This document shows, one piece after another, positions 8,220-12,446 of a stretch of DNA of 26,837 nt. Numbering within the stretch: position 1 is the first letter of the stretch; every line of letters starts with the position of its first letter. Below the pieces are notes generated by a model. It searched no databases. It was given only the letters and a program-made list of their open reading frames with translations, and had not been told where the DNA came from. The DNA comes from Schizochytrium sp. TIO01 (taxonomy: Eukaryota > Protista > Bigyra: Labyrinthulomycetes), in the NCBI GenBank assembly GCA_004764695.1, contig SMSO01000026.1, positions 30,416-57,252 of the forward strand. The letters are read 5' to 3'. A program made the position numbers and the translations under genes.

Positions 8220-8284
8220 ATGTCGCACGACCCAGATGTTGTCTATGCCCTTGAAAAGCTTCAGAATGGTGCTACAATTTTAGA
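8220..8284 (+). CDS. LRR gene exon 1 (N-cap, MSHDPDVVYALEKLQNGATIL-D)
   Basis: ATG at 8220, donor GTAAGT at 8285; its phase matches the LRR exons and it supplies the first LxL motif. Confidence 0.75.
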
Positions 8285-8296
8285 GTAAGTTAACAC

Positions 8297-8340
<44 letters not shown>

Positions 8341-11300
8341 TATTTGCACGGTGTTGCTTTTGTCGCTCTTGTTTTGCAAGTTTATGCAATCTCTTGTTTG
8401 TTTGTTCGGTTTGTTTGATGGATGGATGAGTTGTCTGTTTGAGTGAGTACACATCCATCGAACAAAGAGCAAAATGACAACACAACAAAGATAAATGCTG
8501 AAAGCCAACCTAGATCACTCACGTCCATGCATGCATGCGTGCATCTATTGCATCTATTGCATCTATTGCATCTATTGTAATATGTAACGTGTAATGTATT
8601 GCTTGCCATCATTCAATCAAATCGACAGTCTTTTGAGGAACAATATCGGCGACGAGGGCGCCAAGGCAGTGGGCGCGGCGCTGAAAGAGAACCGGTCGCT
8701 GACATCACTCAAGTAAGTTGTCTACGCAACACCGCAGCTCGTGGACTTGTTTGTACATGATGCTTGGTTTGTTGTTTGGTGGGTGGGTCGGTGTTGTTTT
8801 GGCAAGCAAGTTTATGCAATCGCTTGTTTGTTTGATGGATGGATGAGTTGTCTGTTTGAGTGAGTACACATCCATCGAACAAAGAGCAAAATGACAACAC
8901 AACAAAGATAAATGCTGAAAGCCAACCTAGATCACTCACGTCCATGCATGCATGCGTGCATCTATTGTAATATGTAACGTGTAATGTATTGCTTGCCATC
9001 ATTCAATCAAATCGACAGTCTTCCGTGCAACAAAATCGGCGACGAGGGCGGCAAGGCAGTGGGTGCGGCGCTGAAAGAGAACCGGTCGCTGACATCACTC
9101 AAGTAAGTTGTCTACGCAACACCGCAGCTCGTGGACTTGTTTGTACATGATGCTTTGTTTGTTGTTTGGTGGGTGGGTCGGTGTTGTTTTGCAAGTTTAT
9201 GCAATCTCTTGTTTGTTTGATGGATGGATGAGTTGTCTGTTTGAGTGAGTATACATCCATCGAACAAAGAGCAAAATGACAACACAACAAAGATAAATGC
9301 TGAAAGCCAACCTAGATCACTCACGTCCATGCATGCATGCATGCATGCATGCATCTATTGTAATATGTAACGTGTAATGTATCATGTATCATTCAATCAA
9401 ATCGACAGTCTTTCCTACAACAATATCGGCGACGAGGGCGCCAAGGCAGTGGGCGCGGCGCTGAAAGAGAACCGGTCGCTGACATCACTCAAGTAAGTTG
9501 TCTACGCAACACCGCAGCTCGTGGACTTGTTTGTACATGATGCTTGGTTTGTTGTTTGGTGGGTGGGTCGGTGTTGGTTTGCAAGTTTATGCAATCGCTT
9601 GTTTGTTTGATGGATGGATGAGTTGTCTGTTTGAGTGAGTATACATCCATCGAACAAAGAGCAAAATGACAACACAACAAAGATAAATGCTGAAAGCCAA
9701 CCTAGATCACTCACGTCCATGCATGCATGCGTGCATCTATTGTAATATGTAACGTGTAATGTATTGCTTGCCATCATTCAATCAAATCGACAGTCTTTAT
9801 GGCAACAAAATCGGCTACGAGGGTGGCAAGGCAGTGGGTGCGGCGCTGAAAGAGAACCGGTCGCTGACATCACTCGTGTAAGTTGTCTATGCAACACCGC
9901 AGCTCGTGGCCTTGTTTGTACATGATGCTTGGTTTGTTGTTTGGTGGGTGGGTCGGTGTTGTTTTGCAAGTTTATGCAATGGCTTGTTTGTTTGTTTGAT
10001 TGTTTGGTTGATGGATGGATGGATGGATGGGTTGTCTGTTTGAGTGAATATACATCCATCGAACAAAGAGCAAAATGACAACACAACAAAGATAAATGCT
10101 GAAAGCCAACCTAGATCACTCACGTCCATGCATGCATGCGTGCATCTATTGTAATATGTAACGTGTAATGTATTGCTTGCCATCATTCAATCAAATCGAC
10201 AGTCTTTGGTGCAACAAGATCGGCTCACAGGGCGGCAAGGCAGTGGGTGCGGCGCTGAAAGAGAACCGGTCGCTGACATCACTCAAGTAAGTTGTCTACG
10301 CAACACCGCAGCTCGTGGACTTGTTTGTACATGATGCTTGGTTTGTTGTTTGGTGGGTGGGTCGGTGTTGGTTTGCAAGTTTATGCAATCGCTTGTTTGT
10401 TTGATGGATGGATGAGTTGTCTGTTTGAGTGAGTATACATCCATCGAACAAAGAGCAAAATGACAACACAACAAAGATAAATGCTGAAAGCCAACCTAGA
10501 TCACTCACGTCCATGCATGCATGCATGCATGCGTGCATCTATTGTAATATGTAACGTGTAATGTATTGCTTGCCATCATTCAATCAAATCGACAGTCTTT
10601 ATGGCAACAAAATCGGCTACGAGGGCGCCAAGGCAGTGGCTGCGGCGCTGAAAGAGAACCGGTCACTGACATCACTTGTGTAAGTTGTCTACGCAACACC
10701 GCAGCTCGTGGACTTGTTTGTACATGATGCTTGGTTTGTTGTTTGGTGGGTGGGTGAGTGTTGTTTTGCAAGTTTATGCAATCTCTTGTTTGTTTGATGG
10801 ATAGATGAGTTGTCTGTTCGAGTGAGTATACATCCATCGAACAAAGAGCAAAATGACAACACAACAAAGATAAATGCTGAAAGCCAACCTAGATCACTCA
10901 CGTCCATGCATGCATGCATGCATCTATTGTAATATGTAACGTGTAATGTATTGGTTGCCATCATTCAATCAAATCGACAGTCTTGAATTCAACGAGATCG
11001 GCTCAGAGGGTGCCAAGGCAGTGGCTGCGGCGCTGAAAGAGAACCGGTCGCTGAGGTCACTCAAGTAAGTTGTCTACGCAACACCGCAGCTCGTGGACTT
11101 GTTTGTAGATGATGCTTGGTTTGTTGTTTGGTGGGTGGGTCGGTGTTGTTTTGCAAGTTTATGCAATCTCTTGTTTGTTTGATGGATGGATGAGTTGTCT
11201 GTTTGAGTGAGTATACATCCATCGAACAAAGAGCAAAATGACAACACAACAAAAAGCCAACCTAGATCACTCACGCCCATGCATGCATGCGTGCATCTAT

Positions 11301-12446
11301 TGCATCTATTGTAATATGTAACGTGTAATGTATTGCTTGCCATCATTCAATCCAATCGACAGTCTTAGAAGCAACAAAATCGGCGACGAGGGCGCTAAGG
11401 CAGTGGCTGCGGCGCTGAAAAAGAACCGGTCACTGACATCACTCAAGTAAGTTGTCTACGCAACACCGCAGCTCGTGGACTTGTTTGTACATGATGCTTG
11501 GTTTGTTGTTTGGTGGGTGGGTCGGTGTTGTTTTGCAAGTTTATGCAATCGCTTGTTTGTTTGATGGATGGATGAGTTGTCTGTTTGAGTGAGTATACAT
11601 CCATCGAACAAAGAGCAAAATGACAACACAACAAAGATAAATGGTGAAAGCTAACCTAGATCACTCACGTCCATGCATGCATGCGTGCATCTATTGTAAT
11701 ATGTAACGTGTAATGTATTGCTTGCCATCATTCAATCAAATCGACAGTCTTGAATACAACAGTATCGGCTCAGAGGGCGCCAAGGCAGTGGGTGCGTCGC
11801 TGAAAGTGAACTGGTCGCTGACATCCCTATCGTAAGTTGTCTAAGCAATAGCTCGTGTACTGGTTTGTGCATGAGACATGGTTGGTTGGTTGTGTCGTGG
11901 GTTGTCTACTGTTTTGTTTTGCCGATATTTTTCTTCTCGTCATTGCAAGTTGGTTGTGGAATTTTTTGTTTGGTTGATTGTGGATGTAACAAAGAGCATG
12001 ATAATATCAAAGAATAAATGAAGCAGTACTGGCAATACTGTGGGTGCCTTTTGATGACGTGAAAATTTTAACTGACGAACGGAGTTGATGGCATTTGGTT
12101 TTTACTGATTTCTAGAATTGACCAGTTCACGGATGAAATTTGTAAGGAGCTCGAATTGAATAGGCACGTTTGTTCTGCAAAGGCAAGAAGGACAAGTCTT
12201 ATACAGATATCTCGTGAGCTTCGTTGTATACATGTTGTGAACGATGCACTCTCTCTGCCGTTTCCAGTGAAGCGTAGTCTTCTTACACAAGCTTGGCCTG
12301 CTAACAGCTTTTGTGAGCTGAGTTCGAAAGAGGACTATCTTTCTGCGCAGAAAGTAGAGCTTGATGGGCTGGAAGCTGCAAACGTTGCCTTTCGTGGAGC
12401 GTTGGGATGTCTAGGCCCTTATATTTTGAATAAAAATAGTTCTTAA
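8220..12446 (+). CDS. 11-exon leucine-rich-repeat protein (RI-like/NLRC3-like 28-aa LRRs), 383 aa
   Basis: join(8220..8284,8629..8712,9019..9102,9409..9492,9794..9877,10203..10286,10596..10679,10981..11064,11363..11446,11748..11831,12116..12446) = 1152 nt, open throughout. All introns are GTAAGT...AG, phase 2. The protein is MSHDPDVVYALEKLQNGATILD, then 9x [LxxNxIGxEGAKAVGAALKENRSLTSLx], then IDQFTDEICKELELNRHVCS...NKNSS*. The last exon is in frame with ORF 12156..12446. Confidence 0.88.
8297..8340. repeat. (GCTT)11 microsatellite in intron 1
   Basis: Read directly. Confidence 0.95.
8629..8712 (+). CDS. LRR exon 2 (LLRNNIGDEGAKAVGAALKENRSLTSL)
   Basis: 84 nt, CAG|...|GTAAG. Confidence 0.9.
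9019..9102 (+). CDS. LRR exon 3 (LPCNKIGDEGGK...)
   Basis: 84 nt, CAG|...|GTAAG. Confidence 0.9.
9409..9492 (+). CDS. LRR exon 4 (LSYNNIGDEGAK...)
   Basis: 84 nt, CAG|...|GTAAG. Confidence 0.9.
9794..9877 (+). CDS. LRR exon 5 (LYGNKIGYEGGK...)
   Basis: 84 nt, CAG|...|GTAAG. Confidence 0.9.
10203..10286 (+). CDS. LRR exon 6 (LWCNKIGSQGGK...)
   Basis: 84 nt, CAG|...|GTAAG. Confidence 0.9.
10596..10679 (+). CDS. LRR exon 7 (LYGNKIGYEGAK...)
   Basis: 84 nt, CAG|...|GTAAG. Confidence 0.9.
10981..11064 (+). CDS. LRR exon 8 (LEFNEIGSEGAK...)
   Basis: 84 nt, CAG|...|GTAAG. Confidence 0.9.
11363..11446 (+). CDS. LRR exon 9 (LRSNKIGDEGAK...)
   Basis: 84 nt, CAG|...|GTAAG. Confidence 0.9.
11748..11831 (+). 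CDS. LRR exon 10 (LEYNSIGSEGAKAVGASLKVNWSLTSL)
   Basis: 84 nt, CAG|...|GTAAG; the most diverged copy. Confidence 0.9.
12116..12446 (+). CDS. LRR gene terminal exon (C-cap plus ~95-aa domain of unknown function)
   Basis: Branch-like TACTGAT and TTCTAG acceptor ending 12115; phase 2 places it in frame with ORF 12156..12446; EICKELELNR resembles an LRR C-cap. Confidence 0.75.

What the first reader, a model, noticed from the sequence alone, without database searches (positions are those of the whole stretch)
8220..12446. Candidate diversifying receptor: LRR gene built from one-exon-one-repeat cassettes with near-identical introns
Seen: an intact 383-aa gene, invisible to the ORF track, whose core is nine tandem ~390-bp cassettes. 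Each has an 84-nt exon encoding exactly one 28-aa RI/NLRC3-type LRR and a ~300-nt intron that is almost identical between copies, with unique cap exons at both ends. The introns are more conserved than the variable codons, the reverse of the normal pattern. Known: similar architecture was reported for Ectocarpus ROCO LRR and NB-ARC-TPR genes (Zambounis et al. 2012, from memory) as candidate shuffling immune receptors, and lamprey VLRs use LRR cassettes. Inference: the homogeneous introns act as recombination substrates that add, remove and swap whole LRR modules in frame, generating a recognition repertoire (for example against viruses or bacteria) in a unicellular thraustochytrid. I know of no description of this in Labyrinthulomycetes.
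Basis: partly seen in the sequence, partly recalled or inferred. Interest (0 to 1): 0.9.

Follow-up and report, generated by a model that had tools for sequence, protein, structure and literature searches.

The report
Hidden hypervariable LRR gene beside rDNA
A 385-bp tandem repeat between the 5S and 18S rRNA genes of a thraustochytrid protist, apparently the one published as a non-coding spacer, is a spliced 383-aa gene with one leucine-rich repeat per mini-exon; it belongs to a large, mostly contig-end family whose repeats are kept almost identical except at five predicted binding-face codons, as in immune-type recognition proteins.

Summary
Window 8220-12446 (+) holds an 11-exon, 383-aa open model. 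It has a 65-nt first exon, nine 84-nt phase-2 exons that each encode one 28-aa RI-type LRR, near-identical ~300-nt introns, and a 331-nt last exon.

It is not a lone oddity.
- The cassette intron has at least 391 copies at 96-100% identity on more than 20 contigs, mostly near contig ends.
- In 362 cassettes from 37 arrays (4-20 per array), every exon is 84 nt. 361 have an AG acceptor, 362 a GT donor, and none has a stop.
- Divergence is 54-59% at five hypervariable codons, against 5% at scaffold codons and 6-7% in introns.

Splicing is supported for the family by RNA-type contigs and MMETSP transcripts. It is not shown for this exact copy.

The array fits "LORE-TEARS Group 0" of Aurantiochytrium limacinum, published as a spacer. 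In other loci the same cassettes feed a Roc-COR-TIR exon. This copy instead ends in a conserved helical C-terminal module.

My reading is a germline multigene recognition repertoire shaped by gene conversion and cassette gain and loss. Somatic shuffling is untested. This scan had already found the same system on other DNA of this genome. The closest published precedent is the brown-alga one-exon-per-LRR ROCO genes.

The parts
8220..8284 (+). Exon 1, the N-terminal cap: ATG plus 21 codons plus 2 nt. No hydrophobic signal-like stretch.
   Evidence: Read. With 100 nt upstream it has at least 40 paralogs at 84-100% identity. Some of these lie upstream of Roc-COR-TIR ORFs.
8285..8628 (+). Intron 1 (344 nt). 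It has a unique 5' part with a (GCTT)11 microsatellite at 8297-8340. From about 8378 onward it is homologous to the cassette intron.
8567..11848 (+). Tandem array as called by TRF: period 385, 8.4 copies. It fits the published 'LORE-TEARS Group 0' element.
   Evidence: The description in bioRxiv 10.1101/2023.06.15.545109 was read.
8629..8712 (+). LRR cassette exon 1 (84 nt, phase 2). Variable residues at codons 3, 4, 6 and 9: L, R, N, D.
   Evidence: Pfam LRR_6 E 8e-4.
9019..9102 (+). LRR cassette exon 2. Variable residues: P, C, K, D.
9409..9492 (+). LRR cassette exon 3. Variable residues: S, Y, N, D.
9794..9877 (+). LRR cassette exon 4. Variable residues: Y, G, K, Y.
10203..10286 (+). LRR cassette exon 5. 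Variable residues: W, C, K, S.
10596..10679 (+). LRR cassette exon 6. Variable residues: Y, G, K, Y.
10981..11064 (+). LRR cassette exon 7. Variable residues: E, F, E, S.
11363..11446 (+). LRR cassette exon 8. Variable residues: R, S, K, D.
   Evidence: Its 3' end at 11446 is joined directly to a following exon start in RNA-type contigs.
11748..11831 (+). LRR cassette exon 9. Variable residues: E, Y, S, S. It also differs at scaffold codons 18, 21 and 23.
8713..11747 (+). Span that holds cassette introns 2-9 (298-325 nt each, GTAAGT...CAG) between the exons. They differ pairwise by 0-4%. Length differences come from microsatellites.
   Evidence: At least 391 copies at 96-100% identity genome-wide. 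No Rfam match. Fold z-score -1.17.
11832..12115 (+). Intron 10 (284 nt). Only its first ~50 nt resemble the cassette intron.
   Evidence: Nearly uncovered in the RNA-type run X15 but covered in the DNA run X1.
12116..12446 (+). Last exon, the 109-aa C-terminal module plus stop. Predicted as two long helices. AATAAA lies at 12429-12434.
   Evidence: At least 40 paralogs at 87-100%. Only 3 clusters of relatives among 1.84 billion representatives. 18 invariant columns across paralogs and distant relatives. AF2 gives helices at 2-46 and 71-104, mean pLDDT 69.
7641..7759 (-). 5S rRNA gene (context). It is divergent from the LRR gene and lies 460 nt upstream of the ATG.
   Evidence: Rfam RF00001, 96.5 bits.
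16211..21744 (+). 18S-5.8S-28S rRNA unit (context). It starts 3.7 kb downstream of the stop codon.
   Evidence: Rfam RF01960, RF00002 and RF02543.

Best explanation
Window 8220-12446 is a real protein-coding gene for a soluble 383-aa protein. It has a 22-aa N-terminal cap, nine RI-type leucine-rich repeats and a conserved 109-aa helical C-terminal module. There is no signal-like hydrophobic stretch, so it is probably intracellular.

It is the LRR-only form of a large family that sits mostly at contig ends. The family uses one shared 5' module and a variable number (4-20) of 385-bp exon-plus-intron cassettes. It ends in either of two 3' modules: this helical C-cap or a Roc-COR-TIR exon.

Shown:
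- Each cassette is one 84-nt phase-2 exon, so any whole-cassette gain, loss or swap keeps the reading frame.
- Cassettes are homogenised across the genome. Introns and scaffold codons differ by about 5-7% between arrays. The unique flanks of the same paralogs differ by about 11%.
- The exception is five codons per repeat: x1, x3, x4, x6 and x9 of L-x1-L-x3-x4-N-x6-I-G-x9-E-G. These differ by about 55%.
- Recent duplicates differ at these codons by whole-triplet swaps between common states, which is what gene conversion between cassettes produces.

Inferred:
- Conversion and unequal exchange between cassettes, within and between chromosome ends, reshuffle a pool of variable patches.
- Selection for diversity, or a locally raised mutation input, keeps those patches different. 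Purifying selection keeps every exon open and spliceable.
- The result is a germline repertoire of binding surfaces, most plausibly for recognising variable ligands such as viral or other foreign proteins.
- The Roc-COR-TIR paralogs would be the signalling receptors. This LRR-only form would be a stand-alone binder, partner or regulator.
For: Gene model and repeat.

Coding constraint across the family:
- 362 of 362 cassettes have an 84-nt exon. 361 have an AG acceptor, 362 a GT donor (360 are GTAAGT), and none has a stop.
- About 104 stops would be expected at the variable codons under independent base frequencies, which is a crude null.

RI-type LRR:
- Pfam LRR_6 scores E about 1e-3 on single exons.
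- A profile of the nine exons hits RI-like LRR chains in the PDB, including RSP15, DRC5, LRRC34 and NOD2, at E 1e-9 to 3e-3.

Family size and position:
- At least 391 intron copies.
- At least 40 scored copies of each cap, out of 80-89 candidates.
- Contig lengths place most loci within about 20-120 kb of contig ends.

Divergence classes:
- Within versus between arrays: variable sites 0.54 and 0.59, scaffold 0.052 and 0.052, intron 0.061 and 0.068.
- This gene versus the C27 copy: caps 0.3%, cassette introns 2.2%, variable sites 44%.
- Unique intron 10, the cap exon and the 3' flank average about 89% identity to paralogs. Cassette introns average about 93% between arrays, and the best-matching cassette intron per paralog averages 97.6%.

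Conversion-type swaps ATC to TGA and GAC to TCA appear between near-identical arrays. All four allele combinations occur between every pair of variable blocks. Identical 4-residue variable words make 117 pairs against 37 +/- 7 expected.

Variable residues are mostly S, D, G, R, E, Y, N, Q, K and W. In an AF2 model of a natural homologue, x1-x6 lie in the beta segment and x9 at the start of the helix.

Splicing (family level):
- Contigs of run X15 join 11446 directly to a following exon start, and join a cassette end directly to 12116.
- The DNA run X1 has no such joints.
- X15 leaves intron 10 and the 3' intergenic stretch almost or wholly uncovered.
- MMETSP transcript P0004 reads an LRR exon straight into the C-cap.

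C-cap: invariant residues are shared with relatives at 34-36% identity that also carry RI-type LRRs.

Roc-COR-TIR paralogs: in L005 the array ends in a variant LRR exon spliced in phase to an ORF with Roc (E 7e-19) and COR-A. A TIR_2 match follows in the same 867-aa open frame, and roughly 20 such ORFs of about 850-870 aa lie beside arrays or 5' caps.
Against: - Splicing and expression are shown for the family, not for this exact copy. The spliced contigs and transcripts carry a few differences from it. Run X15 is only guessed to be RNA.
- A classical test does not show positive selection. At the variable codons pS is 0.52-0.59 and pN 0.53-0.58, a ratio of about 1. Silent sites there are saturated too. 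The case for diversity-maintaining selection therefore rests on the roughly tenfold excess over introns. Locally raised mutation is not excluded.
- No ligand, localisation or phenotype is known. The immune-type role is an analogy: variable binding face, TIR paralogs, contig-end position, and a host that carries mirusviruses.
- The three copies at the 5S-18S position all have nine cassettes, so module gain and loss is not evident at this particular position.
- The species was inferred from the match to a published description, not from a sequence comparison.
Confidence: 0.7

Rival explanations
1. Donor archive. This LRR-only gene, and others like it, mainly serve as a store of cassettes that are copied by gene conversion into the Roc-COR-TIR receptor genes. 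Their own protein would matter little. Silent antigen-gene archives, and the LRR-only loci proposed as reservoirs in brown algae, would be the parallel.
For: - The same cassettes, with introns 97-99% identical, occur in Roc-COR-TIR genes.
- Conversion-type swaps are seen.
- Cassettes are nearly unstructured by array.
- PMC11378527 suggests LRR-only loci as reservoirs in brown algae.
- Some paralog C-caps are broken.
Against: - The frame, splice sites and both caps of this gene are intact.
- The C-cap is conserved, with invariant residues, in distant relatives whose LRRs are not homogenised. That implies a protein function.
- Transcripts of C-cap paralogs exist.
- The two roles do not exclude each other.
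Confidence: 0.13
2. Programmed or high-rate mitotic diversification. Cassettes would be added, removed or swapped within clonal cultures at rates far above ordinary recombination, perhaps coupled to rDNA or telomere recombination. Each lineage would then carry a different repertoire.
For: - The architecture allows it: symmetric phase-2 exons, about 300 nt of near-identical intron, contig-end position beside rDNA, and many donor arrays.
- The same idea was raised for Ectocarpus (PMC3341825).
Against: - No data here bear on variation between cells.
- The gene is complete in the germline, unlike lamprey VLR genes.
- Several arrays on different contigs are identical or nearly so, and the three copies at this position all have nine cassettes. 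That argues against very high rates.
- The low-depth 385-nt skips in DNA contigs are what paralogs and repeat collapse would produce.
Confidence: 0.07
3. Non-coding chromosome-end spacer, as published. The 385-bp repeat would have a structural role at chromosome ends and the open frame would be incidental.
For: [quoted passage not shown] It lies beside rDNA at many contig ends.
Against: - There are 0 stops and exact 84-nt exons with canonical splice sites in 362 cassettes, while intron lengths vary.
- The exons match the LRR_6 and RI-like profiles.
- Spliced RNA contigs and transcripts exist.
- Homologous LRR-plus-C-cap proteins occur elsewhere.
- The array is fused in frame to Roc-COR-TIR in paralogs.
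- A structural by-role of the DNA is not excluded.
Confidence: 0.03
4. Housekeeping LRR scaffold. The protein would be, for example, a nucleolar, ciliary or Ran/RNase-inhibitor-like binding protein. The variable positions would simply be unconstrained surface residues.
For: The nearest solved LRRs are axonemal and other RI-like scaffolds. pN/pS is about 1 at the variable codons.
Against: - Unconstrained sites should be homogenised like the introns, at 6-7%, not held at 55%.
- Dozens of paralogs with different surfaces, the contig-end location and the TIR-bearing paralogs are unlike housekeeping genes.
- The residue mix rich in Ser, Tyr, Trp, Arg, Asp and Gly, and the absence of stops, indicate filtered rather than free variation.
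Confidence: 0.05

Closest known systems
LORE-TEARS Group 0 of Aurantiochytrium limacinum MYA-1381 (bioRxiv 10.1101/2023.06.15.545109)
   Same: About 9 units of about 385 bp between the 5S gene and the 18S-28S cluster, repeated at many chromosome ends and kept uniform between chromosomes (one search compared).
   Different: It was published as a long repeated spacer without database similarity and with a possible role in end maintenance. The words LRR and leucine do not occur in that text. Here the units are exon-intron cassettes of an intact, spliced LRR gene. Identity with the published element is inferred from the description, not from a sequence alignment.
Brown-alga LRR-ROCO genes with one LRR per exon (Ectocarpus, PMC3341825; four brown algae, PMC11378527)
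   Same: - Both are stramenopiles.
- One LRR per exon, with phase-2 symmetric exons.
- Variable repeat number and order.
- Variable solvent-exposed residues.
- LRR-only loci exist alongside LRR-Roc-COR genes.
- Both were proposed as immune-type receptors.
- Paralogs here have Roc and COR.
   Different: - Exons here are 84 nt and encode 28-aa RI-type repeats. The brown-alga exons are 72 nt and encode 24-aa repeats.
- The introns here are near-identical genome-wide.
- The loci sit at contig ends beside rDNA.
- The Roc-COR paralogs here carry a C-terminal TIR.
- This gene has a helical C-cap instead of Roc-COR.
- Homology of the two systems was not tested.
Lamprey and hagfish variable lymphocyte receptors (from general knowledge)
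   Same: LRR modules are used as interchangeable cassettes, with diversity concentrated on the binding face.
   Different: VLR germline genes are incomplete. They are completed in lymphocytes by copying flanking cassettes, with cytidine deaminases involved. Here the germline gene is complete and no somatic step is shown.
Ribonuclease inhibitor and NLR (NOD/NLRC/NLRP) LRR domains (from general knowledge)
   Same: 28-29-aa RI-type repeats, exon boundaries in register with the repeats, and intracellular binding proteins. NOD2 is among the PDB hits.
   Different: - RI and NLR exons usually encode two repeats each, and their introns are not homogenised.
- There is no NACHT or NB-ARC domain here.
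- The family is far more uniform outside the variable codons.
Subtelomeric contingency gene families, such as Plasmodium var, Trypanosoma VSG and ESAG, and yeast FLO (from general knowledge)
   Same: Chromosome-end location, many paralogs, ectopic conversion creating mosaics, and pseudogenes among the members.
   Different: Those mostly encode surface antigens or adhesins of parasites or yeasts. This is a soluble LRR protein of a free-living decomposer, and variation is confined to five codons per 28-aa repeat.

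Membership tests
RI-type (LRR_6) leucine-rich repeat proteins | Repeat length of 28-29 residues with the consensus LxxLxLxxNxIgxxGaxxLaxaLxxN | tested here: met
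   Nine 28-aa units. L, N, I, G, G, K, A, V, A, L, K, N, S, L and L are invariant in this gene. The same scaffold holds in 362 cassettes.
RI-type (LRR_6) leucine-rich repeat proteins | Significant match to the Pfam LRR_6 model or to solved RI-like LRR chains | tested here: met
   Single exons score E 8e-4 to 0.08, below the 23.4-bit cut-off because each was tested alone. A profile of the nine exons hits RI-like LRR chains at E 1.6e-9 to 3e-3. Homologue P0008 scores 81.8 bits on LRR_6. The joined protein was not searched.
LORE-TEARS Group 0 (published chromosome-end repeat) | [quoted passage not shown] | tested here: met
   TRF gives period 385 and 8.4 copies, and there are nine exons. 5S is at 7641-7759 and 18S at 16211. 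The description was read.
LORE-TEARS Group 0 (published chromosome-end repeat) | Sequence identity with the published element and species | not testable with these tools
   The published assembly could not be aligned here.
One-exon-per-LRR shuffling receptors (brown-alga LRR-ROCO type) | Each LRR on its own symmetric exon, so that exon gain, loss or swap keeps the frame | tested here: met
   All nine exons are 84 nt and phase 2. 362 of 362 exons in the family are 84 nt.
One-exon-per-LRR shuffling receptors (brown-alga LRR-ROCO type) | Repeat number and order differ among paralogs, with shared repeats at different positions | tested here: met
   Arrays hold 4-20 cassettes. Shared variable words make 117 identical pairs against 37 expected. 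The word EFES sits at position 7 here and at position 5 in the C27 copy.
One-exon-per-LRR shuffling receptors (brown-alga LRR-ROCO type) | Roc-COR GTPase module in the same protein | tested here: not met
   This gene ends in a 109-aa helical module with no Pfam family. Paralogs do carry Roc, COR-A and TIR_2.
One-exon-per-LRR shuffling receptors (brown-alga LRR-ROCO type) | Excess amino-acid change (omega above 1) at exposed LRR positions | tested here: inconclusive
   pN/pS is about 1 at the variable codons because the silent sites are saturated too. Diversity there is about ten times that of introns. Site models in PAML were not run.
VLR-type somatically assembled LRR receptors | Incomplete germline gene that is completed by copying flanking cassettes | tested here: not met
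   The germline gene is complete and open.
VLR-type somatically assembled LRR receptors | Cell-to-cell differences in the assembled gene | not testable with these tools
   Only contigs of public runs could be laid. No single-molecule long reads were available.
Introner-like mobile introns | Near-identical introns inserted in many unrelated genes | tested here: not met
   All listed copies lie in arrays spaced about 385 bp apart, next to LRR exons.
NLR (NACHT or NB-ARC plus LRR) receptors, 'NLRC3-type' | Central NACHT or NB-ARC NTPase domain | tested here: not met
   Neither cap of this gene has such a domain. The paralogs use Roc-COR instead.

The most novel reading that the evidence does not exclude
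The repeats published as rDNA and telomere spacers would be the working parts of a chromosome-end recognition system. Recombination between chromosome ends, perhaps driven by the adjacent rDNA and telomeres, would continually re-deal about five contact residues per LRR among LRR-only and LRR-Roc-COR-TIR genes. The rates would be high enough to differ between clonal lineages. That would give a single-celled stramenopile a contingency-type immune repertoire against its persistent viruses.
Probability: 0.12. Interest if true: 0.92.

Novelty: new variant of a known kind. Interest (0 to 1): 0.75.

Why it matters
- It gives a coding role to a conspicuous repeat class that seems to have been published as non-coding spacer. 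Chromosome ends of this protist would then carry a hidden family of dozens of genes that standard annotation misses. In about 15 billion predicted proteins, the C-terminal module was found only in transcriptome and metagenome predictions.
- It extends the one-exon-per-LRR design beyond brown algae to a unicellular, transformable laboratory organism that carries persistent mirusviruses. The proposed immune role becomes testable by knock-out and challenge there.
- It is an unusually clean natural case of concerted evolution that spares only a few codons. That makes it useful for studying how conversion and selection interact.

Tried and rejected
The census therefore stops at 37 arrays, and the contig-end and telomere context of many loci could not be read.
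- Rfam found nothing inside the gene. The intron folds no better than shuffles, z = -1.17. An intron-borne structured RNA as the reason for intron uniformity is dropped.
- The introner idea is dropped, because all copies sit in LRR arrays.
- Pfam on the C-cap gave only a chance-level hit, zf-C2H2_assoc3 at E 0.039.
- The AF2 model of the C-cap is two long helices at modest confidence: pLDDT 69, pTM 0.34. No fold search was run on it, because a helical hairpin at that confidence would match too much.
- The AF2 model of homologue P0008, folded without an alignment, is usable only for its LRR part.
- A motif match at window 26638 is chance.
- MMETSP proteins P0001 and P0004 match no fetched locus exactly, 89.5% at best. 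Their source locus or strain is unknown.
- Nei-Gojobori counts gave no omega above 1.
- The joined 383-aa model was not sent to any search or folding tool. Every search was made exon by exon, by reference. The joined frame was checked only locally, for length and stops.
- Complex prediction, the protein atlas and the search for homologous proteins were not used.

Full report
**1.

Tandem Repeats Finder reports one long array in the window: 8567-11848, period 385, 8.4 copies, 90% matches. Reading the sequence and locating the splice motifs gives an 11-exon model on the + strand.
- Exon 1 is 8220-8284.
- Nine 84-nt exons start at 8629, 9019, 9409, 9794, 10203, 10596, 10981, 11363 and 11748.
- The last exon is 12116-12446.

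Every intron is GT..AG and phase 2. The joined frame is 1152 nt, or 383 aa, with one terminal stop. No ORF of 120 aa or more lies in this span, so the gene really is invisible to an ORF scan.

Each 84-nt exon encodes one 28-aa unit, x1-L-x3-x4-N-x6-I-G-x9-E-G-A-K-A-V-(G/A)-A-A-L-K-E-N-R-S-L-T-S-L. Codon x1 is split by the intron.

Introns 2-9 (298-325 nt) differ pairwise by 0-4%. The last ~250 nt of intron 1 and the first ~50 nt of intron 10 belong to the repeat. Exon diversity averages 0.14 per site, almost all of it in codons x1, x3, x4, x6 and x9 at 0.5-0.8 per site, with A/G dimorphisms at codons 12 and 16.

**2. Kind of repeat**

Single exons match Pfam LRR_6 at E about 1e-3. A profile of the nine exons (A1) hits RI-like LRR chains in the PDB: radial spoke protein 15, DRC5, LRRC34, GALA proteins and NOD2, at E 1.6e-9 to 3e-3.

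The N-terminal cap has no hydrophobic stretch, and nothing in the C-terminal module looks membrane-spanning. The protein is therefore probably soluble and intracellular. This is my inference from the sequence.

The joined protein was not sent to any search or folding tool. All searches were made exon by exon, by reference.

**3. Context in the window**

Rfam places a 5S rRNA gene at 7641-7759 (-), 460 nt upstream of the ATG and divergent from it. It places 18S at 16211-17996, 5.8S at 18086-18236 and 28S at 18384-21744 (+). The gene therefore lies between the 5S gene and the large rRNA unit.

**4. It is one member of a large family**

Searching the window's own genome (64.07 Mb, 37 contigs) with one cassette intron gave at least 391 matches at 96-100% identity on more than 20 contigs. 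They lie in runs spaced about 385 bp apart.

The last exon and the first exon with its promoter each have 40 scored matches, out of 80-89 candidates, at 84-100% identity.

Contig lengths put most loci within about 20-120 kb of contig ends. Several loci that look internal come as head-to-head pairs, for example C30 at 5.479 Mb (+) and 5.521 Mb (-). They look like chromosome ends joined in this assembly, which is my inference.

**5. Census**

On the window plus 50 fetched loci I located cassettes by their conserved core. This gave 362 unique cassettes in 37 arrays of 4-20 cassettes.
- 361 have AG exactly 2 nt before the exon.
- 362 have GT exactly after base 84, and 360 of these read GTAAGT.
- None has an in-frame stop.

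Under independent base frequencies about 104 stops would be expected at the four freely varying codons. That null is crude, but the gap is very large. Intron lengths vary, through microsatellites, while exon length never does. This is strong evidence for selection on coding and splicing.

Family-wide, the same five codons are hypervariable (amino-acid diversity 0.61-0.88), and so is the silent third base of the Leu codon that abuts x1. Variable residues are mainly S, D, G, R, E, Y, N, Q, K and W. Aliphatic residues are rare.

In an AF2 model of a natural homologue (P0008; LRR part at pLDDT about 80), x1 to x6 fall in the extended beta segment and x9 at the first turn of the helix. That is the concave face and its ascending rim.

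**6. Homogenised everywhere except the variable codons**

Among 309 non-redundant cassettes, the mean differences are as follows.

| Site class | Within arrays | Between arrays |
|---|---|---|
| Variable sites | 0.54 | 0.59 |
| Scaffold sites | 0.052 | 0.052 |
| Introns | 0.061 | 0.068 |

Arrays thus barely differ from each other in cassette make-up. The unique parts of the same paralogs are more diverged.

| Part compared with paralogs | Mean identity |
|---|---|
| Intron 10 | 89.4% |
| Cap exon | 88.8% |
| 3' flank | 89.0% |
| Exon 1 plus promoter | 89.5% |
| Best-matching cassette intron in each paralog | 97.6% |

Three genes sit at the same 5S-18S position on different contigs: C25 (this one), C27 (identical to C13:110 kb) and C6. 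All three have nine cassettes and near-identical caps. Between C25 and C27 the caps differ by 0.3%, intron 10 by 1.4%, the cassette introns by 2.2% and the scaffold sites by 4.5%. The variable sites differ by 44%, and the sets of variable residues are almost entirely different.

**7. How the variable codons change**

Arrays that are recent duplicates, C31:3.16 Mb and C19, differ at 24 of 4303 positions: intron 0.36%, scaffold 0.72%, variable sites 3.3%. The variable-site changes are whole-triplet swaps between the two common states, ATC to TGA at the split codon and GAC to TCA at x9. Three simultaneous point changes are implausible. Copying from another cassette explains them.

All four allele combinations occur between every pair of variable blocks. 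Identical four-residue variable words are three times as frequent as under free reassortment, 117 pairs against 37 +/- 7, and 78 of those pairs are between arrays. Both whole cassettes and sub-exon patches therefore move between loci.

A Nei-Gojobori count gives pS 0.52-0.59 and pN 0.53-0.58 at the variable codons, against pS 0.09-0.12 and pN 0.05 in the scaffold. There is no omega above 1. The variable codons are saturated at silent sites too.

This fits old variable patches that are kept and reshuffled while their surroundings are homogenised. It also fits a locally raised mutation input. It does not fit a recent burst of amino-acid-changing point mutations. If these sites were merely unconstrained, they should sit at the intron level of 6-7%, not at 55%.

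**8. Expression and splicing**

Twenty public runs hold part of the stretch. Those guessed to be RNA hold about 0.23 of its sampled words, close to the exon share of the stretch.

I laid window 11340-12700 on four runs.
- Contigs of X15 (guessed RNA) join base 11446, the last base of exon 8, directly to "TCTT" plus a variable patch plus the conserved exon body. This is the predicted cassette-to-cassette junction, with the patch of other cassettes.
- X15 contigs also join a cassette end directly to 12116, the predicted last junction.
- The DNA run X1 shows no intron-precise joint, only whole-unit (385-nt) skips at low depth. Paralogs or repeat collapse would produce those.
- X15 leaves most of intron 10 almost uncovered and has no depth from 12490 to 12700. 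X1 covers both.

Independently, the C-terminal module retrieves MMETSP transcriptome proteins. P0004 reads an LRR exon straight into the module ("...LKVNWSLTLL-E-MSDGLTDE..."). Its first 12 residues are a translation of the intron tail, so that transcript began in, or retained, the upstream intron.

These transcripts and contigs differ slightly from this copy, 82-90% at protein level against the fetched loci. Splicing is therefore shown for the family, not for this exact gene.

**9. The C-terminal module**

Among 1.84 billion representative proteins only three clusters match it. All three come from MMETSP or JGI metagenome predictions, and none from NCBI or UniRef. The two distant ones, at 34-36% identity, also carry RI-type LRRs that are not homogenised.

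Eighteen columns are invariant across 14 paralogs and these relatives. AF2 predicts two long helices, 2-46 and 71-104, at mean pLDDT 69. The module is therefore an old, conserved, lineage-restricted domain. That argues the LRR-only protein has a function of its own. Two paralog copies are broken, L040 and L043.

**10. The same cassettes feed Roc-COR-TIR genes**

TIR_2 and COR-A matches lie in open frames of about 850-870 aa directly downstream of arrays, or of 5'-cap matches, on the same strand. Roughly 20 such ORFs lie at places such as C30:11-12.6 kb, C13:4.010 Mb, C35:2.645 Mb, C32:40 kb, C7:1.033 Mb, C8:69 kb and C34:2.812 Mb.

In L005 (C30:8224-11524) the array, with introns 99% identical to those of this gene, ends in a variant LRR exon. 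A phase-2 intron then leads to an acceptor at L005:1989 that opens the ORF L005:1964-3301 in frame. That ORF contains Roc (E 6.6e-19) and COR-A (E 2e-11).

The family therefore has one 5' module, a cassette array, and either of two 3' modules.

**11. What is published**

The preprint on the telomere-to-telomere assembly of Aurantiochytrium limacinum MYA-1381 describes "LORE-TEARS". [quoted passage not shown] The authors call these elements spacers without GenBank similarity that may serve chromosome-end maintenance. The words LRR and leucine are absent from the text.

The fit with this window is exact in position, unit length and copy number. Identity was not checked by alignment, and this assembly is a different one, with contigs of up to 9 Mb. 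No other paper in the searchable library mentions LORE-TEARS, and none links thraustochytrids with subtelomeric LRR genes.

The closest precedent is in brown algae: one 72-nt phase-2 exon per LRR in LRR-ROCO genes, with exon shuffling, alternative splicing, LRR-only loci as possible reservoirs, and a proposed immune role (PMC3341825; PMC11378527).

This scan had already reported the same cassette system on other DNA of this genome, several times, with follow-ups reaching the LRR-Roc-COR-TIR reading. Some of those could not test splicing.

**12. Verdict**

It goes too far in implying an active generator of diversity.

What is shown:
- a germline multigene family, mostly at contig ends, under concerted evolution;
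- conversion-type reshuffling of five codons per repeat;
- strict maintenance of frame and splice sites.

What is inferred:
- selection for diversity at a binding face;
- an immune-type recognition role. This is suggested by the TIR-bearing paralogs and by a host known to carry mirusviruses (PMC12606086, abstract seen).

This particular gene is the LRR-only class with a helical C-terminal module. Its own partner and role are unknown.

Noticed in passing
window 3926-6630 (-): A 635-aa ORF (4723-6630) matches Pfam DUF6729 at E 2.5e-9. It is overlapped by a 306-aa ORF (3926-4846) with no family. They may be one gene with an intron or frameshift. Its nature is unknown.
   Followed up: partly
window 7641-16211: Genes for three RNA polymerases sit within 9 kb: 5S (Pol III, minus strand), the LRR gene (presumably Pol II, plus strand, 460 nt away and divergent), and the 18S-28S unit (Pol I) 3.7 kb after the LRR stop codon.
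   Followed up: partly
window 17997-18383: The transcribed spacers are very short: ITS1 about 89 nt and ITS2 about 147 nt, judged from the Rfam boundaries.
   Followed up: no
window 8297-8340, 8540-8577, 9328-9354, 9990-10030: Length differences between otherwise near-identical cassette introns come from small microsatellites: (GCTT)n, (TGCATCTAT)n, (CATG)n and (GATG)/(GTTT)n.
   Followed up: partly
L040:7475-7789 and L043:3909-4221: Two paralogs have a broken C-terminal module, one by a premature stop at 85 aa and one by a frameshift. The family therefore includes recent pseudogenes.
   Followed up: partly
G000 C30:5479267 (+) and 5521119 (-); C13:4.00-4.02 Mb (+) and 4.06-4.07 Mb (-); C31:3.16 Mb (+) and 3.21 Mb (-): Head-to-head, partly identical arrays lie deep inside multi-megabase contigs. 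They look like chromosome ends joined in this assembly, or like internal inverted subtelomere-like blocks.
   Followed up: no
G000 C36:4985776-4989514 and C24:4060707-4065282: A C-cap exon match lies 2-3 kb downstream of a Roc-COR-TIR ORF on the same strand. It could be a separate short gene or an alternative terminal exon. The DNA could not be fetched.
   Followed up: no
window 22000-26000: G+C drops to 0.34-0.35 downstream of the 28S gene, against 0.40-0.47 elsewhere. No tandem array of the kind published downstream of 28S was found inside the window.
   Followed up: no
L047 (G000 C13:7146649-7153353): This 19-cassette array has shorter units (345-386 bp) and a more diverged scaffold, for example AKALA and EDG. 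Other published repeat groups with other unit lengths may therefore be diverged branches of the same cassette family.
   Followed up: no
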